This document shows, in pieces, positions 2,331 through 53,456 of a stretch of 64,000 nt of DNA (its first letter is position 1; every line of letters begins with the position of its first letter). The notes under the pieces were generated by a model. The model was not told where the DNA came from, ran no database searches, and worked only from the letters and a program-made list of their open reading frames with translations. The position numbers were made by a program, and so were the translations under genes. The stretch comes from Octopus sinensis (taxonomy: Eukaryota), in NCBI RefSeq assembly GCF_006345805.1, contig NC_043012.1, forward strand, positions 24,490,001 through 24,554,000. Direction: 5' to 3'.

Positions 2331-2449
2331 ACTACAAATAATAATTGTAATCAACACCGAATGGCGGTGCCCCAGCATGGCCACAGCTCGTGAGCTGAAA
2401 CTAGATAAAATATAAAATATTAAAAAAATATATAAAATATATAAAATAT

Positions 2450-12307: not shown

Positions 12308-12901
12308 ATGTCCATGTTCCATGCTGGGGATGGGCTGGACCACGTTTCTGTGAAGGCCCAGACATGAGCACTTTCACATATTTGAACAACAGACTTTTGG
12401 TCTTTGCCTCGAGGCTTTCATTGGTCTAAAGCTGGTGTAGAAGACCCTTGCCCAAAGTGCCACGCAGTGGGACTGAATCCAAAACCACATGGATTAGAAG
12501 TGATATTTTTAATGCCATAACCATGCCTGAACCTACATGTTGGATTGGATTGGATTGGATGAAGGCCTCAGCATGTTCTCTCCATCAAGTACAGTCTGAT
12601 GTGCAGGCCATGAATTTGGCCTTGAGGTCATTCTGGTTTCATGAGCCTACTACTCTGCCATACTGGCTCAGCATGACTTGGTAGAAGGATACAGTTTCTA
12701 TACTCAGGAGAAGGAACAAGTCGATTACACCAACCCCAGGGCTTGACTGCTACTTATTTCATCAATCCTGAAAGGATGAAAGGCAAAGTTGACCTCAGCA
12801 GAATTTGAACTCAGAACATAAGGACAGACAGACCTCAGCCGAATTTGAACTCAGAAAATAAGGACAGACAAACTACCACTAAGCATATAAGGTTTGCTGC
12901 C

Positions 12902-13128
12902 TTACTCTTTTACTTGTTTCAGTCATTTGACTGTGGCCATGCTGGAGCACCGCCTTTAGTCGAGCAAATCGACCTCCAGGACTTATTCTTTGTAAGCCTA
13001 GTACTTATTCTATTGGTCTCTTTTGCTGAAATGCTAAGTTATGGGGCCGTAAACACACCAGCATCAGTTGTCAAGCGATGTCGGGGGGACAAACACAGAT
13101 GTACAAACACATGCACACATACATATAT

Positions 13129-13199
<71 letters not shown>

Positions 13200-13361
13200 C
13201 GCGATGAGCATCTTTCAGTTTCCGTCTAACAAATCCACTCGCAAGGTTTTGGTTAGCCTGAGGCTATAGTAGAAGACACCTGCCCAAGGTACCACGCAGT
13301 GGGACTGAACCCAGAACCATGTGGTTGGTAAGCAAGCTACTTACCACACAGCCACTCCTGC
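12902..13361 (-). mobile_element. Full-length SINE family B
   Basis: Same consensus, with an expanded internal (CA)(TA) tract. Confidence 0.9.
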
Positions 13362-13526
13362 TTTATACATATATGCTTACATCAACCAAAATAAAAAGTA
13401 TATGTGTCTTCTGTTAGGTTTTATGTTGAATGTTCTAGTTGTTTGCTTAATATCAATTGATTGAGCCTCTGATTCTTGGCTGATGGTGTGAGAGAGTGAG
13501 TGCTTCACATCCAGGTGAACCTTTAA

Positions 13527-13787: not shown

Positions 13788-14184
13788 GTGCAAGCCCCCC
13801 CCCCCCCCGCATTGAATCACAGGTATAGCTCATTTGACAGTGTTCTATACAGTTTCTGTCGACCCAATTTCAGCCACGAGGTTTGAGTCAACATAAGGCC
13901 CATGGTTAAAGAACACATGTCCAAAGACGTCACGCTGTGTGATTGAAGCTCAGAACCTCTTGGCTCCAAGGCAAACTTCTAAACCATTTGCGTGCAAGCC
14001 CCCATTGAATCACAGGTATAGCTCATTTGACAGTGTTCTATACAGTTTCTGTCGACCCAATTTCAGCCATGAGGTTTGAGTCAACATAAGGCCCATGGTT
14101 AAAGAACACATGTTCAAAGATGTCACAGCTGTGTGATTGAAGCTCAGAACCTCTTGGCTCCAAGGCAAACTTCTAAACCATTTG
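13788..14184 (+). repeat. About 195-bp tandem duplication of an already decayed SINE fragment (13788-13990, 13992-14184)
   Basis: Near-identical copies that differ mainly in a poly-C run. Confidence 0.95.
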
Positions 14185-17733: not shown

Positions 17734-18132
17734 CATCAGTCACCCCCATAGCATCACTCAACCTCATAGCATCAGTCACCTCCATAGCATCAGTCACCCC
17801 ATAGCATCAGTCACCCCCATAGCCACAGTCACCCCCATAGCATCAGTCACCCTCATAGCATCAGTCACCCTCATAGCATCAGTCACCCCATAGCATCAGT
17901 CACCCCCATAGCATCAATCACCCCCATAGCATCAGTCACCTCCATAGCATCAATCACCCCCATAGCATCAGTTACCCTCATAGCATCAGTCACCCTCATA
18001 GCATGTCACTTCCATAGCATCAGTCACCTCCATAGCATCAGTCACACCCATAGCATCAGTCACCCCCATAGCATCAATCACCCCCATAGCATCAGTCACC
18101 CCTAAAGCATCAATCACCCCCATAGCATCAGT
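17734..18132. repeat. 18-bp minisatellite AGCATCAGTCACCCCCAT, about 22 units
   Basis: Direct tandem units with occasional 16-17-bp units; source of the (MGVTDA)n ORF in the track. Confidence 0.95.
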
Positions 18133-23922: not shown

Positions 23923-24211
23923 TTAAAGCATTCTTCATTGTAATATTTCCTGTTTGTGCGACTTTATTCTCCAATATCTTCTTCTTTCACTTCAAATTAG
24001 CTTTCAACTTTCTACAGATCTCACTGCTCCTTCCCATTATTCCATAACCGCTAACATATAGAAAAGTTTGTTTAGAAGAATGATTATATATACATGTATG
24101 AAAATTAAAAATTATAGATTATTAGTTTTGTAATATAACCATCAGGGTGAATAAACAAACTAACAAACAAACAAAAAAAGAAAGCAAGAAAGAATGAAGT
24201 TGCTATTTGTT

Positions 24212-24252
<41 letters not shown>

Positions 24253-24296
24253 GGTATTATTATCATTATTATTATTATTATCATTATTATTATTTG

Positions 24297-24329
<33 letters not shown>

Positions 24330-24923
24330 GGTATTATTATTATTTGTACCTTCTCTTACAAATATCTAATTTGATATTTCCAACTTATTTTCATTGGGGT
24401 AGGCCTTCCTTTCTCTACCCACCACCTATCTCTGCCTCTCTGATATAGAATAATAAAATGAATAAAAGTAAATAAAATAAAATAGTTCAGACTAATGAAG
24501 TGGTTTTAACATAGTTAATACTTTATTGTGTTGGTATGTATGTAGTATCTTCTGATCAATGACTTTTAATCTAATAGTGAGACTTTCTTTCTTTCTCTCT
24601 TTTCTTTGTGTATTGATTTTTTATTGTATCCTAAATTGTGAATATATTATAATAGAATGTGTTTGATCAGCAAGTTTTGGTGCCACAATGTCCGTCTGTG
24701 GTTGGGATAGCTGGAGATTTTTGTAAAAGTATTAAAATGGTGTACTGGAAAAGAAAGGAAGTATATAGGGAAAAAACAACAACAACAACAAAACAAATCT
24801 TAAGTTAACTGAGCAATATTTGATTAATTTACTTTCTTTCTTTGCTTCCTCTCATTCTCTCCTTCTTTCAGTCTGTTTTTATTTCATTCCCTATCTATAT
24901 TATACCGAGAGTCATTTTCTTTG

Positions 24924-25522: not shown

Positions 25523-25735
25523 GGTGGTGGGGGCTAGTGGAATCAGCACACTGGTTAAAATACTTAGCTGTGTTTCGTCTGTCTTAACGTTCTGAGTTCA
25601 AATTCCGCCGAGGTCAACTTTGCTTTTTCATCCTTTGGGGGTCAGTAAATTAAGTACCAGTGAAACGCTGGGGTTGATATAGTCAACTAACCCCTTCCCC
25701 CAAATTTCAAGCCTTGTCCCTATAGTAGAAAGGAA
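25522..25735 (+). mobile_element. SINE family A, older copy
   Basis: gttctgagttcaaattccgccgaggtcaactttgc...taagtaccagt; follows an (ATT)n array. Confidence 0.85.
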
Positions 25736-26279: not shown

Positions 26280-26454
26280 AAGAATTATTTTGCCTATTTG
26301 ACATTGCCTCTTTATTATTATTTTTTTTGTTTGTTTGTTTCTGCATATTCTCTTTATGTTCCATCATGTGTTGTCCTGATTTTTTGCTTTATCCATATAT
26401 TTTGCTCACCATTCATCTTCAGTCTAACTTAGTGTTGTGTCCCCTACTCCACAG

Positions 26455-26532
26455 GGCTGGACAAATCCACTGGTGGGATGCCTAGGACTGCCCTAAAGGA
26501 CCAGGGTGAACTTTCATTTTATAGTAGCTCAG
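26455..26532 (+). CDS. Candidate internal exon A of unidentified gene (78 nt, phase 1-1): (G)LDKSTGGMPRTALKDQGELSFYSSS
   Basis: Branch-like CTAAC, acceptor tgtcccctactccacAG, donor CAG|GTTAGT. Length is a multiple of 3 and only one frame is open. Paralogous to 37101-37193. Confidence 0.55.
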
Positions 26533-26648
26533 GTTAGTGGCCAACGATTTCTAATCCCACTTCTCACTGTTTCCCAGCCAGTTCGTAGTACGTTCTTACT
26601 ACGCTGGTTGCTTTAACAGCTGCACAGTCTATATACATATATATATGT

Positions 26649-26703
<55 letters not shown>

Positions 26704-26825
26704 TATAATCTTTTTTTAAATGTTTGATCTAGGTTTTCTTTTTTTACATATCTACATACAAAAACACGTGCACTTATAAAATTATATATATATATATATA
26801 TAAATGTGTGTGTGTGTGTGTATAT

Positions 26826-26863
<38 letters not shown>

Positions 26864-27058
26864 ACACATGCACACACACGTACATGCAAACAGATTTTGT
26901 TCAACTGCGACTGTTCTCAACTGAATTCAACATGCCTGCGAATTTACTTTCATACTATTACAAATATTTATATATTGTGTCTATAAATACTTGCATGTAT
27001 CCCAATGTACGTGCATCACGTACACACACACACACACACTTACACATGTGGATACACA

Positions 27059-27090
<32 letters not shown>

Positions 27091-27226
27091 TACACAGACA
27101 AATGCACACATACAATGCAAACATTCAACATTTCAGAAAAAGAAAGAATAACGTTGGTTGTAAGCTTTTGCTTTGTTTGTGTGACTTTATATCTGTTTTA
27201 TGTTTGTTCTGTTGGGGTTTTTTTTC

Positions 27227-27264
<38 letters not shown>

Positions 27265-27699
27265 ATTTTTCATTTTACTGTTGATTGCTTTTTTTTTTCT
27301 TTTTCTTTTTTGCTTCAGAGTTTTATTATTACCTTTATTATTGCTATTGTTGTTGTTGTTGTTATTTCTCAATCCTGTCTCTCCTGTAAAGCATGTAATC
27401 TAAACTGAAGAATCAATATGAAGTCTGGAGGACGTCGAGCAGGGAAGGGAGGGCCGGGGTGGGAGCAGAAGACGGTTTAATTTTTTTTAATTTTTTTATG
27501 CTTTTTGTCTTCTTGTCTTTCTTTTTTTTGTTCCGGTTCTGTTTGACTTTCGATGATGGACAGATGTACATTTTCAGATATATTTCAAGCCAGATCCTTT
27601 TTGCTGTTGTCTTCACTCTTTATACGGAACAAAAATGCCCGTGACCAAACTTGAAATAATGCAGATGTGTGTCTTTCTCAGTCATATGTGCTGTATATG

Positions 27700-27743
27700 T
27701 TTGAGATGTGTGTGTGTGTATACGCATATGTATATATACATGC

Positions 27744-27781
<38 letters not shown>

Positions 27782-27867
27782 GAAAATATACATATGTAAT
27801 ATGTACATATGTATGTATATATGTATATATACATATGTATATATATATATGTATATATATATGTATG

Positions 27868-27898
<31 letters not shown>

Positions 27899-27957
27899 GT
27901 ATATATATATGTATATATGTATGTATATATATGTGTGTATATATGTATATGTATATA

Positions 27958-28040
<83 letters not shown>

Positions 28041-28132
28041 AATATATATATATGCATATATATATGCATATATATGTGTGTGTATATATGTTTATATATA
28101 TATGAATACGTGTATATGTGTGTATGTATGTA

Positions 28133-28175
<43 letters not shown>
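27700..28175. repeat. Compound (TA)/(TG)/(TATG) array; similar at about 14340-15460, 26630-27110, 34700-35600, 37300-37870, 42500-42730, 55370-55810
   Basis: Direct inspection; these produce the Y/I/M/C/V and H/T-rich ORFs in the track. Confidence 0.95.
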
Positions 28176-28176
<1 letters not shown>

Positions 28177-28453
28177 TTCTGGACCACATCCTAAATAAAT
28201 ACCATCCAGAAGACTTGTTCTCCATATGCTACAAACACTGGTGCTGCTGTTGCTGCAACTACTACCACTGCTACTACTACATGATCAAATCTGCTGAAAC
28301 CCACTTGTGGTGGTTGTATCTACCTCTCTCTTTTCCTCATTTCCATCCCACCATCTCCAAAGGTCTGCACAAAACACCTTACCTATCAATAGCTTTTTCC
28401 ACCTTGAGGACTGTGTCCTCTCTCTCTCTTCGTTATCCGTGTTTTTCCTACAG

Positions 28454-28533
28454 GCATCAATCTACCAAAGTTCAAGCTGTGCACTGACCACATCAACTTC
28501 AAAACAGTGGGACTGGAAAGGGTTTGGGCTTGA
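28454..28533 (+). CDS. Candidate terminal exon; phase 1 reads (G)[25 protein letters not shown]
   Basis: Strong pyrimidine tract ctctctctcttcgttatccgtgtttttcctacAG, non-repetitive sequence, phase compatible with exon A. No donor seen, and U-rich UTR-like sequence follows. Confidence 0.35.
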
Positions 28534-29477
28534 AGCATTGCGACCTCCTCAGAAAGGAAGAAGAAAAATACACAAATTTTTTTGCTTTTTACCAATTTTT
28601 GTATTTCAGACGTATATAGATATTTATTCCTGATGGTGTGTTTTTTTTTTAGAAATATGAGTGAATTTAGGGTTTTTTTTTCTTCTTACCTTGTTGTTGC
28701 TTCTCATATCTGTACATGTATTATTTAATCTGTGTGTGCTTATGTAATTTGTATATATATATTCTATATCTATTTATATATATCCTGCCATTTTAATCCT
28801 CTCCTGTTTTATTTATTTGTTTGTCGGGTTTTTCTGTTTTTGTTTTTTTTTATGGTTATATGGTCACCTGCGAAAGTTAATTAGTGAGGAGCATTATTGC
28901 CAATCTGTTGTCGTTCCTTCTTCTTTTACCTGTCTGTTGTGTCATGACTGGCTCACATGTCTTTCATTGCATTATCATCTACCATCATCTACAAACACTT
29001 TCACAAAACAGTATCATGTTAATACTAACCCAAACAATTTACTGCCCCCTCCCCCGAGCAATACATCTTTGCTACATTTTTTTTTTTCAATCCTTATTTG
29101 ACCATTAGCCATTAGTGGTGTGGTGTATATTCATACTTAATTTCTCTAATACAATCTCAACGATCTAATTAGATATTCTGTGAATTTCTATATTAAATTT
29201 GTACTTTTAATTTGAACGACATCGTTTCTAATCTAGAAATTAAAAGAAAAGACTAGAATTCTGAAATGAGATGCGAAACTTAATGAAAATTATATATATA
29301 TATATATTATATATATATATATATATCTGTGTGTGTGTATAATGAATGCATATATACGTAATGTATGCATGTATGCCGTTAATAGGCCAGTTACTGCAGT
29401 ATTCAGCTGTGTACATGCATACATTAAATATGATACAAAATGGTGTTATTTTAATTTCATACTATCACAATTGTGTC

Positions 29478-29515
<38 letters not shown>

Positions 29516-29529
29516 TGTGTGTGTGTGTG

Positions 29530-29717
29530 TAGGAAGAAGTGACAAGAAAACAAAAGACGAAGACAGGTGGTGTAGATAACAAACAGATGTATTGGTTTAA
29601 GGCTTGGGAAGTGAAAAAGTCTTTAATGTTCAGAACCTGCGCTCTTCCACGGAAAGGAGTGTAGAAAGAAACAAGGAGAGAAAATAAAAAATGTGTAGTG
29701 GCTAGCGATCTGTCATG
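29530..29717 (-). mobile_element. Second P2 pLTR fragment with decayed hammerhead (about 29620-29657)
   Basis: Shares caaaagacgaagacaggtggtgta...aaacagatgtatt and tgtagtggctaRcgatct with 21758-21960. Confidence 0.6.
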
Positions 29718-30483
29718 GTGAATGCTGGACAGAGATGTCACACAGGAGAGCTAGGAAGAAGGGGAAATAATAAAGTAGTGGTGATCCCAAAACAAAAGTT
29801 CGCGTGCATGTGTATAAGGGAGCATGTACATACGTGTGGAAGAGGGCCGGTGACCTTGATGTGTGCATGTGTAGCTGTGTGGATGATGGTGTGGGGCTGG
29901 GAAGGGGTCAGTGCTAGTGTGTGCATGGTGGTGTGATGTTATGTGGTGTGTGTGTATTGTGGTGTGGTAATGTGTGGGTGGTGTGGTGGTGTTAGGATGT
30001 GGAGGAGGCAAGAGTAGGGAAAGCAAGGGTGGGGTGTAAGTTAGGCTGAGGGGGTAGAGTGTGGGGTATGTGGGAGTGGGTGTAAGGGATGGGATGGATA
30101 GGGAAGGTGGAGTTACGAGAGAGGGATGATGATGAAGGGAGAGGGGAAAGGAGAAGGTGGGTAGGAATGAAGAGAAGAAAGAAGCAGGGTAGGAGTGAAG
30201 AGAAGTAAGAGTTGGAGAAAGAGAGGAGAAGTGGGTAGGAGGAAATAGGTGTGAGAGGAAGAGAGGAGAGGGGAGGAGGGTTAGATGAAGAGAAGAGGAG
30301 AGTTGAGCCCATGTGGCACAAAGGAGTAAAGGGAGAAGATTAATCCCTGTATATATATATATATATAGATTTATCTTTGTTTTATGTTACAATAATGTAA
30401 AAGTGGTCAATATATAGAATGGGAAACTCAACTATTCTAGAGTGGAGCTTTAGGTTTAGATAAAAGGATATATAAATATACCC

Positions 30484-30514
<31 letters not shown>

Positions 30515-30934
30515 TATTTTCAATTATGATGGTTACATTTCAAATGTTATGTTTAGACAAGAATCCGGAAAGAAGTAAGGATTAAAAAAAATATGCGTGT
30601 GTTAGTAGTTATTTTTATGTGTATGTATATGTGTGTGCATGCATATATATGTGTGTGTGTTCTATTATTCCGTTACTTGTGTCAGCCATTGGACCGTGTG
30701 AGTGTGTCTGTGTGTAGCTTCTGCATAGTTTACACTCACCAAATTCCACTTGCTGGACATTGATCAATTCAGTCCCACGGCTGATGATACCAAATATCGG
30801 TTGAAAATGCCATGCCATGCAGTCAGGAAGTGGGACTTGTTGGCAATACGGGGCCCATGTCTGAGAGAATGATATTAGTTCGATTATGTGTTGCGTCATT
30901 GGAACACTATTCAGATGGGTTCTCTGTGTCTTTG

Positions 30935-31207
30935 ATCTCTTACTTATTTCAGTCAGTGGACAATGGCCATGCTGGAGCACTGCCTTGAAGGGTTTTAGCC
31001 AAGCAGATCAACACCAGCAGCTTTATTAAAGTCTAGTACTCGTTCTGTCAGTTGTTTTACCGAGCTGCTAAGCTATGGGGACATAAACAAACCAGCACTG
31101 GTGGTCAAGCAATGATGGGATAACAAGAAACACACAGACATACACTCCATACCAGAATGAACAATGGACATTAAATGAGGGGGATACACTCATACATACA
31201 TACATAC

Positions 31208-31238
<31 letters not shown>

Positions 31239-31483
31239 CATACATACATACATACATACATACATACACACATACATACATACATGCATACACACACACA
31301 CACACTCACACACACACACATTCAGACAACTGTCTTCTATAAAGTTTCTGCCTACCAAATTCACTCACAAAGCAATGGTCACCTCAGGGCTATAGCAGAA
31401 GACACTTGCCTAAAGTGCTGCACGGTGGGACTGAACCTGAAACCATGTGGCTGCAAGGCAAGCTTCTTAACCACACAGCCATG
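30935..31483 (-). mobile_element. Decayed SINE family B with (TACA)n expansion
   Basis: ggccatgctggagcactgcc...gaagacacttgcctaaagtg...aaccacacagcc. Confidence 0.8.
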
Positions 31484-31908
31484 CTGAAAAAGAGGAATGG
31501 TAGGGTCAAGTGAAATAGACGAGCCTTGTCCTCTCCATTTCTCCCAGCTCACTTCTACATCCTGCAGCATTGTAGATGTTCAGACTTGTTCAGAGTACGT
31601 GTTATTGGTTCAGTGGGGTGGCCATGTAATATTTTAGCATTCTGTCATCTTTGGTAATTAATGGTGGGACCTTAATGAATTAGCTGGAAGATATGTTATT
31701 GAATGTCTTAGAGTGACACTTCTCTTATATACACAAGTGTATTCATGTGTATTTACATATGTATATTTGTATATGTGTATGTATATATATACATGTACGT
31801 GTGTATTCATATATATATACATATATACACACACATGTATACTCAGCTCTTTGTTTATATATGTATGTGTGTATATGTGTATGTGTGTATAAAGTGTATG
31901 TTTATTTA

Positions 31909-31944
<36 letters not shown>

Positions 31945-32229
31945 CCTATATATATCAACAGAACAAAATCAATATAATTAAATTTATTATTCATAGATTT
32001 CAAGTTATTAAATAGTATTTTGGACATTAATTGTAAATAGATAAATTCAAAATGATATTCGTACGAGTTTACCGTTGTGTTTTTCTTTTAGTTGGGTTTG
32101 TGTTATTGTTGTTTTGGTGTTTTTGGTGTTTTTTTTTTATTCTAAATATTTTAGACCAATGTCTCTGGAATTAGGGGCTGTTCTGAATTGTTTTGGTGTG
32201 TGAAGTCGCACATACACACACACTATGCA

Positions 32230-32266
<37 letters not shown>

Positions 32267-32639
32267 AACAATGAATCTTTTAATCAAATAAACAAGTGGT
32301 TCTCCTTTATTGACACAATAATTGAGAATGTATTGACAGAGTTGGGACATAAATGGAGCAAGCATTAATCTATACAACTTCCATAATTACAATCTATGCA
32401 TTTAATTCTCCTTTCCCCCACCTACCTCACTACTCATAACTCCCACTTCACCTCCCTTGTGTGTGTGTGTGTGTATTAGTTAGTGCCTGTCAATGAGCTG
32501 ATTTCAGTTTGTAATTATAGACATAAAACCCAGATTAATCACACTTGAAGAAAGAGTTGTCCAGGCTAAAATTTTCATTCTCTACTTGTAGAACTTATGT
32601 TGCCGATGACGTTGATGATGATGATGATGATGATGATAG

Positions 32640-32844
32640 GCCTTTCTACTATAGAAATTTTGAGGAAGGGGGTTGGTTGCTTACATCAGCTGCGATGTTC
32701 AACCAGTTATTTATAATATTGATCCCAAAGGGATGAATGGCAAAGTTGACCTCGGTAGAATTTGAACTCAGAATGTAAAAAAGGCAGACAAAATACCACT
32801 AAGCATTTTGTCCAGTGGGCTAATCAATCTGACAGCTCACCACC

Positions 32845-32882
<38 letters not shown>

Positions 32883-33400
32883 CCTTTCTACCATTAGCAC
32901 AAGGCCTGAAATTTAGATCAATCCCAGTATGCAACTCGTACTTAATTTATTAACCCCAATAGGATGAAAAGCAAAGTTGACCTCGGTAGAATTTGAACCC
33001 CAAATGTAAAGATGGACAAAATACCACAAAGCATTTTGCCCCACGTGCTAACGATTCTGCCAGCTTGCTGCCTTGATATAACGACTCATGTCCCTGCTGT
33101 TGATTGGCTTTTTATTTGCCCTTAGTTGGAAGAACAACAAGGCAGAGCTCACCTCAGCAGGATTCAAACTCAGAATGCAAAAGGTAATAACTAGAGACTG
33201 CACAGTATTTTTATTGAGTTGAGCCCCAGTATATGACTGGTATTCATTGCTTTCATCCTAAAAGAGCTGGATGAAAAGCAAAGGCTAAAGCTTACCAGAG
33301 TGAGGTTTGAACTCAGAGAAAGAGAGAGAGATAGAAGAAGTAAATGTGGTAAAGCATTTAGTCTGCTCCTGTACCATTCCTGTCCTGTCACCATCGCTAG
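32640..33400 (-). mobile_element. Stack of four same-orientation SINE A fragments
   Basis: Repeated ggatgaa..ggcaaagttgacctcgg..gaatttgaactcag motifs at about 32730, 32960, 33140 and 33270. Confidence 0.8.
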
Positions 33401-33990
33401 CAGGAATGATTAGAGGAGACATCTTTGGTATTAGGAAGGGCATCCAGCTGTGGAAGAGGCCATGCCAAAAGCAGACACTAGAGACTGAAGCAGTCCTCTT
33501 CTTCTTTGGATCCTGTCAAACCATCAAACGCTTGCCAACATGGAACTGGATATTAAATGATGTTTATAAAGGTTATGATGAGTTTACAGCATTGAAAAAT
33601 TTAGAGGGAAGTTCGTTGGACTGAACCACTGTACCACTGGCATTTATTGGCCCCTGGAGGACTAAAAGGTGTACTCAAGTTTTATATGATACGAAACCCT
33701 CCACCACCATAGGGAATAATAATCAGTGAGGTCGTTCTTTGTAGATAGATGCATTAATGTATTTAAGCATCGATGTGTATCTGCACACATCCTTTTGTGT
33801 GGTTATATATGTGATGGAAGTGGCTGGGGTCCTTGGAAGGACTGCATTCCTCTATTTCTTGGTTCTGTGGTGAAGAGGAATGCTTCATAGCAGCTAATCC
33901 TCCCCCTCCCCCACCAATCCTCACTTCACACACCTTGGTGTACATGCTCCTTGTTCCTGTAACCCAATTCAATCATTGTTATGGTTTGCA

Positions 33991-34038
<48 letters not shown>

Positions 34039-34769
34039 CACTCTCTCTCTCTTTCTATATACATACAACATATATATATATATATTTATATATATATACA
34101 CACACATATATATATATATATGTTTACACACACATGCCTTTATATGTCTTTATATAAATGTATGTAGGTGCAATGTATGCACACAGATGCACATACACAT
34201 GCAATGGTTTCCATAAGAAGACTAAATACTAAGATGCACATACTCCATTGCTTCACTGTATTTCTTGAAGCCTGAAGCCTGTCCACTAATATTCCTACTC
34301 CACTTATTGTGCTGGCCATTTCTACTCTGTGACTTGCCCTTTCTGCTAGAAGCAAAAATGGCTTTCCTTATATTTAGCAATCTACTGGCTTCCACCCAAG
34401 AGAAGTGCGCCTCCTCCTCCTCCTCCTGCTTTTTCTTTCAGCAATCCACCCATACCATCTCCACCTTTATTAATGCTCTCAGCGACAGCTGTAGTTTTCT
34501 TTCAACAAACAGCTTTTGCATTGCTTTGCTGCAGTTGAGTAGCTTTCAAAATGAGCATTAGTTCATCTTTTTGGATGTTCCACTTCTGTCTGTTTTTCTT
34601 CTTCAAGGTTGTATGTTATGGTTTTATGTTTAGTGTTTGCAGTTCTAATGTGTAAGTAAATTGGAAATATCTGCATCTGTGTGTGTGTGTGGTGTGCATT
34701 AAAATGTGCACTTACATGTATGTGTATGGTGCATAAATGTGTGCTTGTGTGTATTTATGTGTGTGTGTG

Positions 34770-34807
<38 letters not shown>

Positions 34808-34839
34808 TATATGTATGTGCATGTACGTGGTGGTGTATG

Positions 34840-34923
<84 letters not shown>

Positions 34924-35102
34924 CACAACATGCACGTACATATTCATATATATAATATATATATACACACACAAACGGACACATGTAGATATATTATTCA
35001 CACATATATGTATGAATGTATGTTTATGCGAATGGTAAAGTTCTATAGTTTACCTATGTTTGGTACATGTTTATTGCAAGACTTGATATAACTCCGCTAG
35101 AA

Positions 35103-35153
<51 letters not shown>

Positions 35154-35448
35154 ACTTGATAGACTTACACCCAGGAGAGAGCTTACCTGAGTTCTGTTGA
35201 TTTTGAATCCCTATTCCTCTTAATATATATAAATATAAAGATACACATACACACAGGACACCAAACACACACACATTCACACATTCTTGCATACACAAGG
35301 TGAGGGGTGTTTTTGGGGGGTGTTATATAAATATTTGTTTAGTTGTAGTTTATATATATATTATAGATATATATATATGTGTGTGGGGTGTGTGTATATA
35401 TTATATATATATATATGTGGGTGTGTGTGTATATTATATATATATATA

Positions 35449-35509
<61 letters not shown>

Positions 35510-35898
35510 GTTATATATATTATATATATAATATATATATATAATATATAGATATATGTATGTATGTATGTATGTATGTATATATAATCATTCATGCTAA
35601 ACCATTGTGTGTGTGTGTTTGTAGTGAAAATAGCTCAATTTTGTTGATTCTTCATGTTTTGAATCTTTAGATATCACTTTGAGGATAATGGATTCTTGTC
35701 TGAAAACATTTGCCATAATCTTTTCTTTTTAGATTCTTGCTTTGAATACTTAGACGAATAATAATGCGAACCTATATTATTAAAAACAACTACATTGGCA
35801 ATAAAGGCTTAACTTTCCTCTCCAGTTTTTGCTTGCAAAACTTTGTTTCAGTTCTCTTTTTTTTTTTTACATAAAGCTGATACTGAGATCATTTAAAA

Positions 35899-35950
<52 letters not shown>

Positions 35951-36558
35951 TTCACAACAGAAGCAGCTACAACAGCAGTATGAACACCACAGGCACCACT
36001 ATCACCATTGATTAATCAGTTGTTTCGACTGTGTTTTTGTTTGTTCTTTTATCTTTTCTTTTTTTTTTTTCTTTTTTTTTTTTTTTAGCTTTCTTTTGTG
36101 ATCTCCAATTGACTCTCTGAATAACTGGCTGTTTATGCTGACATTAGGTCTTGAAGTGCTTGTCTCCTGTGTTAAGTGTGTATATGTGTGTTCAATTGTG
36201 CATGTGTGTGTGTGTGTGTGTGTGTAGCCTTGTGAGTGTTTGTGTGTATGTCATATTTCCTCTGTGTAGGTCCTGTTCTTATCTTTTCTTATTATGATGT
36301 ATATATAATAGTTATTTAATAGTATTTAGTCTGAAGAATTTGGCTCAACTTATTTTAGACTAGAGAAAGAGTTTTCTCCTTAAAATGAGTATTATTATTA
36401 TTATTATTATTATTTGTTATGATTTTGTTATCATTACTGTTTATTATTATTATTATTAATATTATTTTTATTATTATTATTATTATTAATATTATTTCTT
36501 TATTACCTTTTTATTTTACCTTCTTACCTTTTTGTTTTACTTTATTACTATTTATCAT

Positions 36559-36590
<32 letters not shown>

Positions 36591-36600
36591 ATTATTATTA

Positions 36601-36643
<43 letters not shown>

Positions 36644-36660
36644 ATTATTATTATTATTAA

Positions 36661-36717
<57 letters not shown>

Positions 36718-37100
36718 GCTATCATTATATCATTATTTATTTAATTATTTATTATCATTATTGTTGATGTTTACAATCATTTTCTTCAATAAAAACTGTA
36801 GAAACTCTACTGATAAGATCTGAAGATAAATATACATACATATATACACACACATATATATATATATACATATACATATACATAAACATATATATATGTA
36901 TATATATATGTATATATATGTATGTGTATATATATATATATATATATTTGTATATCTACATCTACTAATTGTTAAAGTTAAGTCTCTGTTAATTGCTGTA
37001 TGCCATTATTTTCCCATTTTAATCGAGAGGTTTAGTCGTATTATTTTAGTGTCTTTAGTTTTTCCATTGTCCAATTGATGTTATGTCCCCTACTCCACAG

Positions 37101-37193
37101 GGTTGGACAATTCCACTGGCGAGGTGCTTGGGACTACCATTATGGAGCATCAGCTTGGGGGTGACATTTCATTTAATACTAATAGCCTTGCAG
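37101..37193 (+). CDS. Candidate internal exon B, paralog of exon A (93 nt, phase 1-1): (G)LDNSTGEVLGTTIMEHQLGGDISFNTNSLA
   Basis: Identical acceptor tgtcccctactccacAG and donor CAG|GTTAGT. Differs from exon A by 9- and 6-nt in-frame indels. Phase 0 is also open here (GWTIPLARCLGLPLW...). Confidence 0.55.
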
Positions 37194-37264
37194 GTTAGTA
37201 ATTATTTATGATCCCAATTTCATCATTTTATCTCTGGTTCTTTTAAGGACGTTCTAGTTTCATG

Positions 37265-40372: not shown

Positions 40373-40868
40373 GATATATACAATCACACACACATTCATA
40401 AGCATATAATCTTGCACTTATCAGTACAAGTAAAGGCAAATAAGTGAACATCAGTAAATAAATATATGAAAGCCACAACTTGCCTCTCCTCAGAGACGAT
40501 GAAATCAGTCAAGCATTGGTAGATATAACAATACAAGATGCCAATTGTCTTTATTCGTTTATTACAATTCCAAATACACACACACACACACACGTGTTTG
40601 TGTATTTGGACACAACAACTTGCACCAGATTCTGTTATTGTTGTTGTTGTTGCCAAAACTATGACATAATGTCTTGCTGATTGCTGCATCCAAATTGCTG
40701 GCAGATAGTGTGGAAAGAGCCATGGTAATTAAATCTTGATACGATTTTCTGCAAGTGCTTATTGAGCACTTCAGTGTTTCACATGGAAAACAAAGCAAAA
40801 AAACACACACATACACACACACACAGCAACCTCTAACCACATTGTTTACAACACAGATACATGTATAA

Positions 40869-41100
40869 GGCGGCGAGCTGGCAGAATCGTTAGCACGCCA
40901 GGCGAAATGCTTAGCGGTATTTCGTCTACCGTTACGTTCTGAGTTCAAATTCTGCCGATGAAGACTTTGCCTTTCATCCTTTCGGGGTCGATAAATTAAG
41001 TACCAGTTACGCACTGGGGTCGATGTAATCGACTTAATCCGTTTGTCTGTCCTTGTTTGTCTTCTCTGTGTTTAGCCTCTTGTGGGCAGTAAAGAAATAG
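40869..41100 (+). mobile_element. Full-length tRNA-derived SINE family A (octopus OR/OK-type), young copy
   Basis: A-box-like TGGCAGAATCGTT and B-box-like GAGTTCAAATTC; 11-bp TSD ATACATGTATA (40857-40867 and 41103-41113); CpGs retained. Confidence 0.9.
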
Positions 41101-41477
41101 ATATACATGTATACACTCACACACACATACATACATGCACACAAAACCAGAACAGGAGGAACATTTTGCAGGTTCTCTTAGACTGGTAAGATTGATGAAA
41201 TGTCAATGGGTGGAGTGGGTGGGGTTGGGGGGAAAAGGCTCAGCTCTGAATGTTTGTAATGTTGTGAACTCTGCTGAAAGCCTCCATGGAACCAATGGCA
41301 GACACTGTTACACCGGATGTGCATGTATCTGTGCATCTATATATATATGATACTGCACCATAGGATGTTTTCTTTTTTTTATCCCTTTTTGTAAAGTTAA
41401 CTGAAGTGATTGGTGTTTATTTGTCAGTGATTAAAACCTGAAGAGGGCAATGGAGAAGACTCGGTCGTTTGTTATTG

Positions 41478-41774
41478 TATACATTTTCTTTTATTATTAT
41501 TAGTATATTATTATTATTATTATTATTATTTATTATTTTATTTATTATTATTAATACATTCTATATTAGGAGTATTATTATTGTAGAAGACTACGCTACT
41601 ATCTTGATTATTATTACATTATTATTAGTATTATTATTATTATTATCATTATTATTATTATTATTACTACTAGGATTATTCTATTCATTATTATTATATT
41701 ATTATTATCATTATCATTATTATTAGTATTTTTATTATTCCTATACACTATTATTATTATTATTAGTACTTATT

Positions 41775-41805
<31 letters not shown>

Positions 41806-41857
41806 CTCTACTTTAGTAATTATTAGTATTATTATTATTATTATTATTATTATCTTA

Positions 41858-41891
<34 letters not shown>

Positions 41892-42030
41892 TACTACTAC
41901 TATTATTATTATTATTATTAGTTATTATTGTATTATTATATTCTATATTATTATACTACTACTATTATTATTATTATTATTATTATTACTACTACTACTA
42001 CTACTATTATTATTGTTATTATTATTATTG

Positions 42031-48258: not shown

Positions 48259-50871
48259 GTCTCTTTCTCCTACTCATGTATAACTCTGTCTTTGTCTTCA
48301 ACATATATACACTTCTTTTCTCTCAGTCTCTCTTTCATCTATTCTCTCTCTCTCTCTCTCTCTCTCTAATTCATTTTATGTCAATCTATTGTTTCTTCTC
48401 TTTCAACAACAATAAACTATTTAATATTCTCTCCTCTCTTTCCTCACATGCTCTCTCTCTCCCTCTCTCTCTCTCTATCCCTCTATTGTCTTTGGTACAT
48501 TCTCACATTATCTTCTGTAACACATCACCACCATTTTGTCTTCTTAATGTCCAAAGTTGATGCTGTTGCTGCAATTGTTGTTATTGCATTGCCATAGTAA
48601 TAGTTAATTAATAGTTAATGTTGTTGTTGTTATTATTACTATTATTATTATTATTGTCATAGTAATAGTTCATTATTGAATCGTTAACTATTTTAATGGC
48701 TTATTTAGACTTGTCTTTTGGATAGTAATTTTACAAGTTCTTTATTTCTCTTCTTAATTCTTTTTGTGTGTGTGTATGTGTGGGGGAGTCTGTGAGTCTG
48801 TCTGTGTGTCTGTCTACATTCCTTAGATTAAGAAATTATTTCCAGTAGTTTTTCTTTTTTTTTTTTAATTATCAAAATTTTAAAAAATAAAATAAAATAA
48901 ATAAGTGATGAAGGAAATTCTAACCTAGAGATTATTATTAAGTTTTATGTCTAGCAGGTAAACTAGGAAAGGTTGTGAAAGTTTATATTCTGAATATATA
49001 CATAACAATTTAGTCTTGCTCAGATAATTAAAAACCTTAGAATACATTTAGCTTGTCAATGTTTCTCTCTCTGTCTGTTTCACTTCCTCTCTTTCTCTAA
49101 CTCACTCACCTCACCTCTCATGAATTATTCATTATGTGCGAAAAGTTTTGGTAGCCACATCTTACCCTCCTCCTATAGACACGTTTACACACACACACAC
49201 ACACACACACCTAAATGAAATGCATTGAAACATGAAACGGTCAAAGACAAAATAATTTTTGGAGATAATAAACTTCTTTCAAAGGATCCATGTTTGAATA
49301 TTTTCATAATTATTCATGAAATCAGTTATGAATTATTATTATTATTATTTATTTTATTTTTTTTAATGTTTTATTGTTATCATCATCATCATCATCATCA
49401 CTGTCGTCATCATTACCATAGTCATCATTATCATTGTTATTTTGGCTGATAGTCTTTTGATTCATCTTGGGCTACTTTTCATTGCAAGTGGTTGTTGATT
49501 ATTACCAAAATATGTGCTTATCACATGAGTTAACAATGAAAAATTCCTAAATATGCAAATAAATAATTATGAAAAAAAAAAAAATTAAAACACACACCAA
49601 TACAGACAAACAAAACTACAGAATTTATTGTGTTTTGATTTTCTTTTATATTTTTGCTTAATTTAAAAGTTATATATTACAAAAAAAAAAAAAGATAGAA
49701 GGAAAAAATCTCTGGTCATCTTTTATATTGTAAATCATTAAAGATTGGTTGTGTTGTAGAGTTCTGGCCATCTGTGATACTATTAACCTCCACCAAGTCT
49801 TTGGATGTTTTAAATAGTTTTAGTTGTTGATACGTGTATGGGTGGGAGTGTTAATTGGTTAGTTACTATTGTACTTAGTCATTTATCAAATTTAGTAATG
49901 ATGGACTTGTTTATATATTGGTATACAATTCTTGCTGGTAAGAACAAAGTTTCTAAAATGAATGGAATAATTTGAAGATTGCTTTGGTACAATGGTAGAA
50001 CGTCTATCACATCTACAGAAAATATGGGTTCAAATCAAACATTCAGCTTTCACTTTTTCCATCCAAGGCTGTTTTTTTTTTCAACCTAATATTATTTAAT
50101 AGCTTGATCTACTTCAAGTTTACTAGTGAAATTATTTATTTTATGTCTATTACAGTTTCTAAATTCTTATGATATATGCATTTATATATATATATAGATA
50201 GATAGATAGATGTGGGTGTGTGTGTGTGTGTATGTATATATATATATAATCACCGGGTCAAAGGATTTGAGAAATTCATAGGTTATAAAAAATAAAAAAA
50301 AATAAGCTAAACAGGACAATATTCTAAAAGCAGAGCAGATTGTAGTTTATGAATTGTTTTCTTAGAAATTCACTTCGTGCATAATAACATTTAGATCTTT
50401 AGAAGTGTGTTGTATTAGGAAACATTTAATAAATAAATGCATGTGTGCTCACCCCCACATCTCTGAAATATGGCCTGCATAAATTGTGATGAAATCTGTT
50501 GATTTTTTAGCATTTTGACCGTTGATGATTATGTGTCAATGGCAGTCAACTGGTTGTCAGTAATGTGCAAGTGAGAGATTTTTCTGTAGTAATAAAACCT
50601 AAACATCTAATGGTATTATGGTATAGGCACCACAAATAGTAAATCAGTCTGTGCGTCATAGTTTGTCTATGTCTCTAGTTATGACTATTAAAGCTAAACT
50701 GTCTGGCCCCCTCTTAATCCTGTATGTAGTACCTCAGGGTTCCCCCTGCTTACTGCTGTGGTCACTGTCCTCTGTTGTCAGCAACAACAACAGTGCAATA
50801 AACCTGACAAGCATTTCATTTGTTCACTCTGTTTGTGATCAATTCTTCTGAAGGCCAAATGAAAGAAATAC

Positions 50872-51103
50872 CTATTTCTTTACTACCTACAAGGGGCTAA
50901 ACACAGAGAGGACAATCAAGGACAGACAAACGGATTAAGTCGATTACATCGACCCCAGTGCGTAACTGGTACTTAATTTATCGACCCCGAAAGGATGAAA
51001 GGCAAAGTCGACCTCGGCGGAATTTGAACTCAGAATGTAACGGCAGACGAAATACGGCCACACATTTCGCCCGGCGTGCTAACGTTTCTGCCAGCTCGCC
51101 ACC
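50872..51103 (-). mobile_element. Full-length SINE family A, young copy
   Basis: About 92% identical to 40869-41100 by hand alignment; 13-bp TSD AAATGAAAGAAAT (50857-50869 and 51106-51118). Confidence 0.9.
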
Positions 51104-51489
51104 TTAAATGAAAGAAATGAAAGAAATGGTTTAGTCCACCTCCCTACCTCTTGTGCAAAATATAGAATGGTATTCAATGAACTAACACCTAACTCCGTGT
51201 ATATGTGTGTGTGAGTGTGTGTTTTTATTTTTCTAAGATAGAAATTTCTGGGTGGGTGACAGCTGGAGATATTGGGAAATATGTAGAGAAGTTGGTTTTT
51301 TTCCTCTTCTTATTTTCATACTCATCCCTGCCACCCATCTTAATGCATTTTTACTAAATAAACATTATTCTGGATATTACAGGTTTTTAAAAGTGAGGTG
51401 TAAATTTCTGTTTGTGTAACAGTTAATGAGCATCAGTATTTGTTAATTATTCAAAACACTCATCACAATACTCTTGTCTGTGTCTCTCG

Positions 51490-52188: not shown

Positions 52189-53410
52189 TACATATATACA
52201 TATATATATGTTTGTATTTAAGTGTTTTTCTTTATGTTGAGTTATAAACAAAAGCAGTTTAGGCTTAAACGAAAGAAGTACTCAATACTTTCCATTTGAA
52301 GTATAACATATTTTGTTATGTTTTTACAAGAAGGGTAACAGCTAACTTCAAAAGACAGCAGACCAGTACTTCGAAGTCACTGTCATTCCTCTTCTTTTAA
52401 ACATATAATATATATCTGCATGCATGTGTGTGTGTGTGTGTGTGTGTAGTAGGCTCTTGGAGTTTTTTTTTTTTTTGCCTCTAAAGAAAATTCATTTGAT
52501 CCTAATGTATGAAGAAAGAAAAATGCTAGTGTCACAAATAACATGATATTCTTCGATTAATGAACAACAACAAAAAAGGAAAGCAAATTATTGTGAAATG
52601 TTTGAATAATTCTTCACACCCACCTACGAGTGTTCCACTATAACCACTCTCTCTCTCTCCCTCGCACTTTCTTCTCTCCATCATTTTCTCACTGTGTCTC
52701 TCTGTGTGTCTGTCTGTTTGTCTCTCTTTCTCTTCAGTTCTCTTTCTAGCTTAAGCTCTCTGCTTTGGTAGTTCGAAATACCAGTTTTAACTAAGAAACC
52801 TGTAAACACACACACACACACACACATACACACATACACACACACATTTATATATGTTTATGTGTGTCTGTTGATTGAGTATGTTTCAAAAACATAACCC
52901 TCCCCCCTCACACACACACACACACACACACAAAAAATGCTGTTAGATTCTTTCAAGAAAAGGAAGGAAAAAAGTTTAGAGTGTTAGTGGTGGTAGTGGT
53001 GGTGGTGGTGGTGATAGTGTCACTTTATTTTTTTAATTTTAATATATTTATTCCATCAAGTTCAAGATGTGATTTTTAGCTAGTAGAGGATGTTTTTTTT
53101 TTATCTTTTAAAAAACAAATTATTTATATTTTTAAAAATTTCTTTATTCTTCTTTTTGGTTAAATATTTATTTCTTATTTTCTTGATATACTGAAGTGGA
53201 CTATCTTCCACTGAGCTCAAGTAAAAGTTTTAATCCTATTTTCAAACTGCAATCTTTATGGTGTTGAATAAATTGATTTTTCTCTCCTCTTCCTAATTAT
53301 CCAAGTCATTTTAAGTTGTTTTAGCTTCATTTAGATCCCCTATCGGTGTGCAATACAAACATTTATAGAAATAACTGATTGCAAACACATTTCATTTCCA
53401 AGCTTTTTTT

Positions 53411-53424
53411 CTTCATCACCATCG

Positions 53425-53456
<32 letters not shown>

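What the first reader, a model, noticed from the sequence alone, without database searches (positions are those of the whole stretch)
26420..37260. Duplicated exon pair with conserved splice sites: candidate mutually exclusive or alternative 3' cassettes
Seen: two segments 10.6 kb apart share an identical 17-nt acceptor (tgtcccctactccacag), similar bodies and the donor CAG|GTTAGT. They are 78 and 93 nt long, differ only by 9- and 6-nt indels, and both are open in phase 1 (GLD[K/N]STG...G[E/D][L/I]SF). Weak similarity continues about 60 nt into the downstream intron. In both copies TGTCC-CCT/AGG-gYt-GGACA could fold over the acceptor AG, and their single difference there falls in the bulge. Known: tandem exon duplication is the usual origin of mutually exclusive exons. 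Inference: these are alternative exons of an unidentified + strand gene. I do not recognise the peptide.
Basis: partly seen in the sequence, partly recalled or inferred. Interest (0 to 1): 0.7.

Follow-up and report, generated by a model that had tools for sequence, protein, structure and literature searches.

The report
Duplicated linker exons of octopus onecut
The two look-alike segments are real, tandemly duplicated small exons of the octopus onecut (HNF6-like) transcription factor gene that lengthen the flexible spacer between its two DNA-binding domains; they are used in any combination rather than one-or-the-other, and both the exons and this type of spacer exon were already known.

Summary
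Segments A (26455-26532, 78 nt) and B (37101-37193, 93 nt) are homologous (blastn E about 1e-15). They share an identical 17-nt acceptor and the donor CAG|GTTAGT, and they are the only two copies in the window.

A search of 1.84 billion proteins found A joined directly to B at 100% identity in Octopus bimaculoides "homeobox protein onecut" (RefSeq XP_052829342.1). Thirteen RefSeq isoforms show that A and B sit in the linker between the CUT domain and the homeodomain. This is the position of the 26-residue HNF-6 beta exon of rat and the spacer exon of skate onecut1.

The isoforms carry A+B, A alone, B alone or neither, combined with two further cassettes (L1, L2) that lie outside the window. 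The exons are therefore combinatorial, phase-1 symmetric cassettes, not mutually exclusive exons.

A is 25/26 identical in Argonauta hians. An AlphaFold model predicts the insert to be disordered.

The proposed hairpin over the acceptor is no more stable than shuffled sequence. A candidate long-range pairing site at 63351-63390 is also not significant.

Verdict: a correct exon call, with the gene now identified. It is a new member of a known kind, already annotated, and of modest interest.

The parts
26429..26454 (+). Acceptor-side intron block of exon A (-26 to -1). It contains the 17-nt tract 26438-26454 that is identical to copy B, with AG at 26453-26454.
   Evidence: 23/26 identical to 37075-37100.
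26455..26532 (+). Exon A: a 78-nt phase-1 symmetric cassette encoding (G/W)LDKSTGGMPRTALKDQGELSFYSSS of the onecut CUT-homeodomain linker.
   Evidence: 100% match to XP_052829342.1. Present in X1, X3, X4, X9, X10, X12, X13 and X14; absent in X2, X5, X6 and X8. 25/26 identical in Argonauta hians.
26533..26597 (+). Donor GTTAGT of exon A and about 65 nt of intron that remain weakly similar to the sequence after exon B. Read-through gives GGT TAG.
26533..37100 (+). Intron between A and B (10,568 nt). It is rich in microsatellites and SINE-like repeats, and no further copy of the exon lies in it.
37075..37100 (+). Acceptor-side intron block of exon B. It contains the identical 17-nt tract 37084-37100, with AG at 37099-37100.
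37101..37193 (+). Exon B: a 93-nt phase-1 symmetric cassette encoding (G/W)LDNSTGEVLGTTIMEHQLGGDISFNTNSLA of the same linker. It is a paralogue of exon A.
   Evidence: 100% match to XP_052829342.1. Present in X1, X2, X4, X5, X9, X10, X13 and X14; absent in X3, X6, X8 and X12.
37194..37258 (+). Donor GTTAGT of exon B and weakly similar intron. The in-frame TAG at 37196-37198 is the stop codon of truncated isoform X10 (tail ...NSLAG), which reads through this donor.
   Evidence: sequence; X10 tail.

Best explanation
What it is. The window lies inside the very long linker introns of the octopus onecut (HNF6/ONECUT-class) homeobox gene, on the + strand. Segments A and B are two small internal exons that arose by tandem duplication of a unit of about 170-200 nt: exon, about 26 nt of upstream intron and about 65 nt of downstream intron.

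How the splicing works. Every intron in this part of the gene splits a codon after its first base. Both exon lengths are multiples of three, so each exon can be included or skipped independently without changing the frame. Together with two more cassettes (L1, 25 aa; L2, 23 aa) that lie upstream of the window, they give a family of proteins. In that family the spacer between the CUT domain and the homeodomain ranges, in the annotated isoforms, from 23 to 80 residues.

What it probably does. The inserted peptide is predicted to be disordered. By analogy with rat HNF-6 alpha/beta and skate Onecut1, changing spacer length and composition most likely tunes how the two tethered DNA-binding domains cooperate on different sites, or adds short interaction motifs. 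It does not add a folded domain.

Shown: exon identity, gene identity, position in the protein, frame logic, co-occurrence in annotated isoforms, conservation of A in Argonauta.

Inferred: that the annotated combinations are all real transcripts, and that spacer length changes DNA-binding behaviour.
For: -: phmmer against 1.84e9 proteins gives one strong hit (E 9.8e-28, 100% identity) in which A and B are contiguous.
- that hit is XP_052829342.1, homeobox protein onecut isoform X14 of Octopus bimaculoides.
- thirteen isoforms have module orders CUT-L2-A-B-HD, CUT-L1-L2-B-HD, CUT-L1-L2-A-HD, CUT-A-B-HD, CUT-L2-B-HD, CUT-L1-L2-HD and CUT-L2-HD, plus truncated forms. Their lengths fit 391 + 25/23/26/31 exactly.
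- the junction residue changes as a phase-1 split codon predicts. It is W after L2 and G after CUT or A. Before CKRK it is S after L2 and A otherwise.
- Pfam CUT at 217-292 and Homeodomain at 372-425 in isoform X4.
- rat HNF-6 structure 2d5v aligns to 216-295 and 351-433, so A+B is a clean 57-residue insertion at the CUT|HD junction.
- the AlphaFold2 model of X4 has pLDDT below 50 and no secondary structure across 294-366.
- Argonauta hians isoform X3 carries L2+A with one substitution in 26 residues.
- 42 other Onecut proteins from molluscs, nemerteans, a brachiopod, arthropods, amphioxus and vertebrates carry 9-82-residue inserts at the same LRLA|xCKRK site. These are often modular.
- Literature: rat Hnf6 exon 2 encodes the 26 beta-specific residues between cut and homeodomain (PMC11800625). 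Skate onecut1 has a 144-bp spacer exon there (bioRxiv 10.1101/2025.07.30.667746). The ONECUT2 linker is disordered, but covalent linkage is needed for high affinity (PMC11490551).
Against: - The isoforms are automated RefSeq models. I could not see the supporting reads, so some long-range combinations may be inferred rather than observed.
- A versus B shows no third-codon-position excess (8/6/8), so the paralogue comparison alone gives no evidence of protein-level constraint.
- No orthologue of B was found outside O. bimaculoides.
- No functional data exist for the octopus protein.
- No sequence similarity to vertebrate spacer inserts was detected.
Confidence: 0.82

Rival explanations
1. Mutually exclusive exons: exactly one of A or B enters each mRNA, enforced by competing RNA pairing or another mechanism.
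For: - They are tandem homologous exons with the same phase and identical acceptors.
- Isoforms with A only and with B only exist.
- A 13-nt perfect complement of the shared acceptor lies at 63376-63388. Extended pairing reaches -52.8 kcal/mol for A and -47.5 for B.
Against: - Six RefSeq isoforms and an older independent model splice A directly to B. Two isoforms have neither.
- Both lengths are multiples of 3, so double inclusion is in frame.
- The intron between them is 10.6 kb.
- Dinucleotide-shuffled versions of the acceptor block find equally strong partners somewhere in the window (-44 to -57 kcal/mol).
Confidence: 0.04
2. The nearly identical block across the acceptor (-17 to +19, 34/36 identical) is a cis-acting RNA element. 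It would be either a local hairpin that hides the AG or a binding site for a splicing regulator. It would be kept in both copies by selection and would make inclusion of A and B regulated, perhaps co-ordinately.
For: - The block is 94% identical against 76% for the rest of the exon, and against 53-59% for introns beyond about 60 nt.
- The hairpin appears in the minimum-energy fold of A.
- Both exons are skipped in some isoforms.
Against: - Fold energies are no better than shuffles (z +0.76 and +0.90).
- With only two almost identical copies, no covariation test is possible.
- The exonic half of the block also encodes the conserved GLD(K/N)STG. Two of its three differences there are synonymous, so protein constraint plus ordinary splice-site constraint may be enough to explain it.
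Confidence: 0.12
3. The 5' ends of A and B are kept alike by gene conversion between the paralogues, not by selection on that stretch.
For: There is a sharp contrast between the near-identical 36-nt block and the more diverged remainder within one short unit.
Against: - The copies are 10.6 kb apart and the identical tract is very short for a conversion tract.
- No second species was available to test for concerted evolution.
Confidence: 0.1
4. The segments are copies of an interspersed repeat, or splicing noise, that the annotation pipeline picked up and that has no protein function.
For: - Another isoform of the same gene (X11) ends in an exon that resembles a multi-copy repeat family of the window.
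- The A/B divergence looks neutral by codon position.
Against: - There are only two copies in 64 kb, both in sense orientation and both with strong splice sites.
- A is 25/26 identical in Argonauta hians.
- A resembles a linker segment of the gastropod Nucella (10/25 ungapped identities; 3 of 600 shuffles score as high).
- Frame and phase are kept despite 15 nt of indels.
Confidence: 0.04

Closest known systems
Rat HNF-6 (Onecut1) alpha/beta isoforms: exon 2 encodes the 26 beta-specific residues
   Same: - A small cassette exon lies in the long intron between the exon encoding the cut domain and the exon encoding the homeodomain.
- Including it lengthens the spacer between the two DNA-binding domains (PMC11800625).
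- Exon A also encodes 26 residues.
- The insertion point in the protein is the same (..SALRLA | ACKRKEQ..).
   Different: - Octopus has four cassettes (two of them, A and B, are paralogues) used combinatorially, not one.
- I did not have the rat exon 2 sequence, so I made no direct comparison. No similarity to the vertebrate inserts I did have was detected, so common descent of the exon itself is unsupported.
- The equal length may be coincidence.
Little skate onecut1 spacer isoform LSOC1X2 (144-bp exon, 48 residues)
   Same: - It is an alternatively spliced, predicted-disordered spacer exon between CUT and homeodomain.
- It is developmentally regulated in neural tissue (retina).
- The spacer form still activates a reporter (bioRxiv 10.1101/2025.07.30.667746).
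   Different: It is a single exon with a different sequence. The skate exon has read-level and functional evidence, which the octopus exons lack here.
Modular linker inserts of other molluscan Onecut genes (for example Biomphalaria GAITGV.. and GSAFKPS.. modules; bivalve GKSF..IKKE.. module)
   Same: - They occupy the same insertion site.
- The modules are of similar size (17-28 residues).
- They occur alone or together in different isoforms, and many begin with G, as A and B do.
- A resembles part of the Nucella lapillus insert.
   Different: Apart from the Nucella match, the sequences are not alignable. No within-gene duplicate pair like A/B was seen in the other linkers I parsed.
Mutually exclusive exon clusters made by tandem exon duplication (for example Dscam, 14-3-3 xi)
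   Same: A and B share a tandem-duplication origin, conserved splice sites and phase.
   Different: - A and B are co-included and co-skipped.
- There is no frame or steric bar to double inclusion.
- There is no significant docking/selector pairing.

Membership tests
ONECUT-class homeobox gene (host gene) | A single CUT domain upstream of a homeodomain | tested here: met
   Pfam CUT 117 bits at 217-292 and Homeodomain 44 bits at 372-425 in isoform X4. Best solved relatives are HNF-6 2d5v (E 6.8e-79) and ONECUT2 8t0f. Both domains are encoded outside the window.
ONECUT-class homeobox gene (host gene) | Divergent homeodomain with F48 and M50 (..NFFMNARRR..) | tested here: met
   The sequence STVANFFMNARRRS is present in all homeodomain-bearing isoforms. 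Its assignment to positions 48/50 rests on established knowledge of the class.
Onecut spacer cassette exon (HNF-6 beta type) | The exon lies between the CUT-encoding and homeodomain-encoding exons and inserts at ..LRLA|xCKRK.. | tested here: met
   Isoform alignment and a two-stretch alignment to 2d5v with a 57-residue gap.
Onecut spacer cassette exon (HNF-6 beta type) | In-frame cassette, with isoforms that have it and isoforms that lack it | tested here: met
   78 and 93 nt, phase 1 on both sides. Annotated isoforms have A+B, A, B or neither. This rests on annotation only; no reads were inspected.
Onecut spacer cassette exon (HNF-6 beta type) | Sequence homology to the rat or skate spacer exon | tested here: inconclusive
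   No significant similarity of A or B to the vertebrate inserts on hand (horse P0077, frog P0091). The rat and skate exon sequences themselves were not available.
Onecut spacer cassette exon (HNF-6 beta type) | Inclusion changes DNA-binding properties | not testable with these tools
   Only a structure prediction was possible, and it shows disorder across the insert.
Mutually exclusive exon cluster | Tandem homologous exons with the same phase | tested here: met
Mutually exclusive exon cluster | The variants are never included together | tested here: not met
   A is joined to B in X1, X4, X9, X10, X13, X14 and in A0A0L8GFN9.
Mutually exclusive exon cluster | An enforcing mechanism: frame incompatibility, a too-short intron, or docking/selector RNA pairing | tested here: not met
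   Both lengths are multiples of 3 and the intron is 10,568 nt. The best candidate pairing site is no better than those found by shuffled blocks. A docking site outside the window cannot be excluded.
Interspersed repeat | Many dispersed copies in both orientations | tested here: not met
   Two copies in 64 kb, both in sense orientation. A genome-wide count is not possible with these tools.

The most novel reading that the evidence does not exclude
Octopus onecut is expressed in most neurons of the paralarval brain. It may use four independently spliced linker cassettes as a combinatorial 'spacer code' that retunes the co-operation of its CUT domain and homeodomain in different neuron types. 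Under this reading the near-identical 36-nt block across the acceptors of the paralogues A and B is a shared regulatory RNA element that couples their inclusion, either as a hairpin or as a long-range partner such as 63351-63390. The A-type exon would be ancient in molluscs, given its resemblance to the Nucella linker.
Probability: 0.1. Interest if true: 0.55.

Novelty: new member of a known kind. Interest (0 to 1): 0.3.

Why it matters
Onecut factors are conserved regulators of neuronal identity. In Octopus vulgaris paralarval brain, 83% of cells are onecut-positive (PMC9712504). A gene that can place between 23 and 80 disordered residues (annotated range) between its two DNA-binding domains, in at least seven combinations, is a plausible way to diversify the target choice of one transcription factor across cell types.

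The octopus case adds a duplicated pair of spacer exons to a phenomenon so far described for one exon in rat liver and one in skate retina. My survey of predicted proteins suggests that the CUT|homeodomain intron gains cassette exons recurrently across bilaterians.

The exons are already in the public annotation and no new mechanism is shown, so the practical value is modest. The result identifies the gene, corrects the 'mutually exclusive' reading and points to a testable splicing question.

Tried and rejected
- Exon and ORF scanning of the window on both strands. Apart from A and B, only repeat-derived or low-complexity frames turned up. No other onecut exon is in the window.
- Rfam and tRNA scans of the whole window: nothing.
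- tBLASTn of both peptides against the window for a third, more diverged copy: none.
- Local hairpin over the acceptor: it folds, but z-scores are +0.76 and +0.90 against shuffles. Longer contexts are also unremarkable.
- Docking-site search. The best partner (63351-63390; 13-nt perfect complement; -52.8 and -47.5 kcal/mol) is matched or beaten by partners of dinucleotide-shuffled blocks. Rejected as evidence.
- Orthologous DNA. The gene spans about 347 kb in O. bimaculoides and about 499 kb in Argonauta hians, too long for the tool to return DNA. The old 61-residue model is not on record. Cross-species tests of the acceptor and of exon B could therefore not be done.
- A second homology search restricted to the linker, for proteins of 119-380 residues, found only the query's own cluster. 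No transcript-derived fragments from other cephalopods were found.
- To get past the length filter of the word-indexed search, I padded the query with X and scored only the real part. This worked and is stated here so the result can be judged.
- Similarity of B, L1 and L2 to other animals' linkers: not significant.


Full report
**1. The observation**

The 17-mer TGTCCCCTACTCCACAG occurs exactly twice in the window, at 26438-26454 and 37084-37100, both on the + strand. None is expected by chance, even allowing two mismatches.

Each copy ends in AG and is followed by a stretch that ends CAG|GTTAGT. Segment A is 26455-26532 (78 nt) and segment B is 37101-37193 (93 nt).

BLASTN of either segment against the window finds only the other (E 1.2e-15). 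tBLASTn finds no third copy.

In a crude splice-site scan of the + strand, A and B were two of the four best candidates.

Both are open in the frame that starts at exon base 3.

Anchored alignments give these identities:
- 23/26 for the last 26 intron bases;
- 34/36 for -17 to +19;
- about 76% for the rest of the exon;
- recognisable similarity for about 65 nt after the donor;
- near-random similarity beyond that.

The protein identity is only 38%. The nucleotide differences fall 8/6/8 on codon positions 1/2/3.

The two qualifications are that 'similar bodies' holds at the DNA level rather than the protein level, and that the second indel is not a clean 6-nt gap in a DNA alignment.

**2. What it is**

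I joined the two peptides in frame. The split codon G|GG gives glycine at the junction. A profile-free HMMER search of 1.84 billion representative proteins gave one strong hit: 100% identity, with A and B contiguous.

The hit is XP_052829342.1, 'homeobox protein onecut isoform X14' of Octopus bimaculoides. Its C-terminal part is a homeodomain.

The word-indexed search only considers proteins of similar length. I therefore padded the real sequence with X and scored only the real part. That search and the cluster look-ups recovered isoforms X1-X6 and X8-X14, plus an Argonauta hians orthologue.

An exact-substring module table reads:

| Isoform | Module order |
|---|---|
| X1 | CUT-L2-A-B-HD |
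| X2 | CUT-L1-L2-B-HD |
| X3 | CUT-L1-L2-A-HD |
| X4 | CUT-A-B-HD |
| X5 | CUT-L2-B-HD |
| X6 | CUT-L1-L2-HD |
| X8 | CUT-L2-HD |
| X9 | CUT-L1-L2-A-B, then a short alternative end |
| X10 | CUT-L1-L2-A-B, then G-stop |
| X12 | CUT-L1-L2-A, then the alternative end |
| X13, X14 | alternative N-terminus without CUT, then (L1)-L2-A-B-HD |

Isoform lengths fit 391 + 25 (L1) + 23 (L2) + 26 (A) + 31 (B) exactly.

The residue at each junction behaves as a phase-1 split codon should:
- W (T|GG) when A or B follows L2;
- G (G|GG) when they follow the CUT exon or exon A;
- S (T|C.) before CKRK after L2, and A (G|C.) otherwise.

The X10 tail ...NSLAG-stop is what the window gives if the donor of B is read through: GGT, then TAG at 37196-37198.

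None of the other exons (CUT, L1, L2, the alternative ends, HD) is in the window. The gene spans about 347 kb in the O. bimaculoides assembly. The 64-kb window is therefore intron plus these two exons. The 100% peptide match is consistent with the window coming from O. bimaculoides or a very close relative. I could not compare DNA.

**3. Where the exons sit in the protein**

In isoform X4, Pfam places CUT at 217-292 and the homeodomain at 372-425.

The solved rat HNF-6 DNA-binding region (2d5v) aligns as two stretches, 216-295 and 351-433. These are contiguous in the rat chain. A+B is therefore a clean 57-residue insertion exactly at ..SALRLA|ACKRKEQ...

An AlphaFold2 model of X4, built with a 49-sequence alignment, gives confident helices for CUT and the homeodomain. 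Across 294-366 the pLDDT is below 50 and there is no secondary structure. The insert has no Pfam match.

**4. Is it under constraint?**

Between paralogues there is no sign of protein-level constraint (8/6/8). Between species there is. Argonauta hians isoform X3 has L2+A with one change in 26 residues, similar to the rest of the protein at about 98%. I found no orthologue of B, so its age is unknown.

A also resembles part of the linker of the gastropod Nucella lapillus. The match is LDTKNGGMPNSADPYDNSSAFKPSS against LDKSTGGMPRTALKDQGELSFYSSS, with 10/25 ungapped identities. Only 3 of 600 shuffles of A reach that score against the 42 linkers. This is a lead, not proof, that the A-type exon is old in molluscs.

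**5. Comparison with what is known**

*Vertebrates.* Rat Hnf6 has three exons more than 10 kb apart. Exon 2 encodes the 26 HNF-6 beta-specific residues between the cut domain and the homeodomain (PMC11800625). Little skate onecut1 has a developmentally regulated 144-bp spacer exon at the same place, predicted to be disordered, and the spacer form still activates a reporter (bioRxiv 10.1101/2025.07.30.667746). In ONECUT2 crystal structures the linker is invisible, yet covalent linkage of the two domains is needed for nanomolar binding (PMC11490551).

*Other animals.* Among the predicted Onecut proteins fetched here, 42 have inserts of 9-82 residues at the same site. They come from chiton, gastropods, bivalves, nemerteans, a brachiopod, crustaceans, aphids, a fluke, amphioxus, a frog and the horse. 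The inserts are often built of modules that occur singly or together.

*Placement.* The octopus exons are a new member of this known kind. The additions are that two of the four cassettes are paralogues and that use is combinatorial. The equal length of exon A and the rat beta exon (26 residues) is not backed by any sequence similarity I could detect.

**6. The mutually exclusive reading and the RNA structures**

Co-inclusion in six RefSeq models and in an older independent model (A0A0L8GFN9) argues against mutual exclusivity. So do co-skipping in two models, lengths divisible by three, and a 10.6-kb intron.

The hairpin TGTCC-CCT/AGG-GYT-GGACA appears in the minimum-energy fold of A. It is not more stable than shuffled sequence (z +0.76 and +0.90). 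With two near-identical copies, covariation cannot be assessed.

Looking for a docking site, I found that 63376-63388 is a perfect 13-nt complement of the shared acceptor. Pairing extends over about 40 nt, at -52.8 kcal/mol for A and -47.5 for B. However, 28 dinucleotide-shuffled blocks found partners of -44 to -57 kcal/mol somewhere in the window. This is not evidence.

The high identity of the -17 to +19 block can be explained by ordinary constraint on a polypyrimidine tract and AG, plus the conserved N-terminal GLD(K/N)STG. Two of the three differences in that exonic part are synonymous. A dedicated regulatory element or a short gene-conversion tract cannot be excluded without other species.

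**7. Mechanism proposed**

Shown:
- A and B are phase-1 symmetric cassette exons in the CUT-homeodomain linker of onecut.
- They are annotated in all four inclusion states.

Inferred:
- Inclusion lengthens a disordered tether from 23 to as many as 80 residues in the annotated homeodomain-bearing forms.
- This changes how readily the two domains bind one composite site or sites with different spacing, as reported for HNF-6 alpha/beta. It may also add short linear motifs.
- The truncated forms (X9, X10, X12) would give CUT-only proteins.

Onecut marks 83% of cells in the Octopus vulgaris paralarval brain (PMC9712504). Cell-type-specific linker choice would therefore be a sensible thing to look for.

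**8. Verdict**

The gene is onecut. The exons are combinatorial cassettes, not mutually exclusive ones. The proposed hairpin is unsupported. The exons are already in the public annotation and belong to a known kind of spacer exon. Interest is modest (0.3).

Noticed in passing
window 63351-63390: This + strand segment carries a perfect 13-nt complement (63376-63388, GTGGAGTAGGGGA) of the acceptor tract shared by exons A and B. Extended pairing over about 40 nt reaches -52.8 and -47.5 kcal/mol. Equivalently, it is a degenerate inverted copy of the 5' part of the A/B unit. Shuffled controls find equally strong partners, so it is not significant on this evidence.
   Followed up: yes
window 12718-12829, 25557-25708, 32654-33078, 40866-41104, 50868-51106: A multi-copy interspersed repeat family occurs in both orientations (40866-41104 and 50868-51106 are 92% complementary). 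Its translation resembles the alternative terminal exon of onecut isoform X11 (..NQSQYITGTYFIDSQNDEKQKSTPSGFELRTVRY). That isoform therefore probably ends in an exonised copy of this repeat, located outside the window.
   Followed up: partly
window 1907-2345, 8224-8642, 12902-13362, 30929-31481, 58178-58431, 60529-60919, 61154-61335: A second SINE-like repeat family of about 440 nt has at least seven sense-orientation copies at 68-88% identity. It gives recurring pseudo-ORFs such as SFDCGHAGAPPLVEQ and HAVGLNLEPCG.
   Followed up: partly
window 17734-18132: A minisatellite: 22 copies of an 18-nt unit (CATCAGTCACCCCCATAG), 88% matches.
   Followed up: partly
window 7743-7981 / 8695-8933 and 13806-13990 / 13999-14184: Two young local duplications (96% and 97% identical). 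The second pair is almost adjacent.
   Followed up: no
whole window, for example 24200-24340, 36400-36780, 41500-41900, 53400-53650: Microsatellite load is very heavy ((ATT)n, (TA)n, (TG)n/(CA)n, (TC)n and a long trinucleotide run at 53400-53650). GC drops to 22-30% around exon B. No Rfam family and no tRNA was found anywhere in the window.
   Followed up: partly
proteins P0001/P0004 (O. bimaculoides X14/X13) and P0011 (Liolophura sinensis X2); not in the window: The alternative N-terminus of the CUT-less octopus isoforms (..MEMFYMAREAVVKYM) resembles the first residues of a chiton Onecut isoform (MERFYMSREAVVKFM). This suggests a conserved alternative first exon in molluscan onecut genes.
   Followed up: no
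proteins P0013, P0024, P0025, P0015, P0018 and others (gastropod and bivalve Onecut isoforms): The CUT|homeodomain junction of many non-cephalopod Onecut proteins carries modular inserts that occur singly or together (for example GAITGV..., GSAFKPS...). Cassette-exon gain at this intron looks recurrent across bilaterians.
   Followed up: partly
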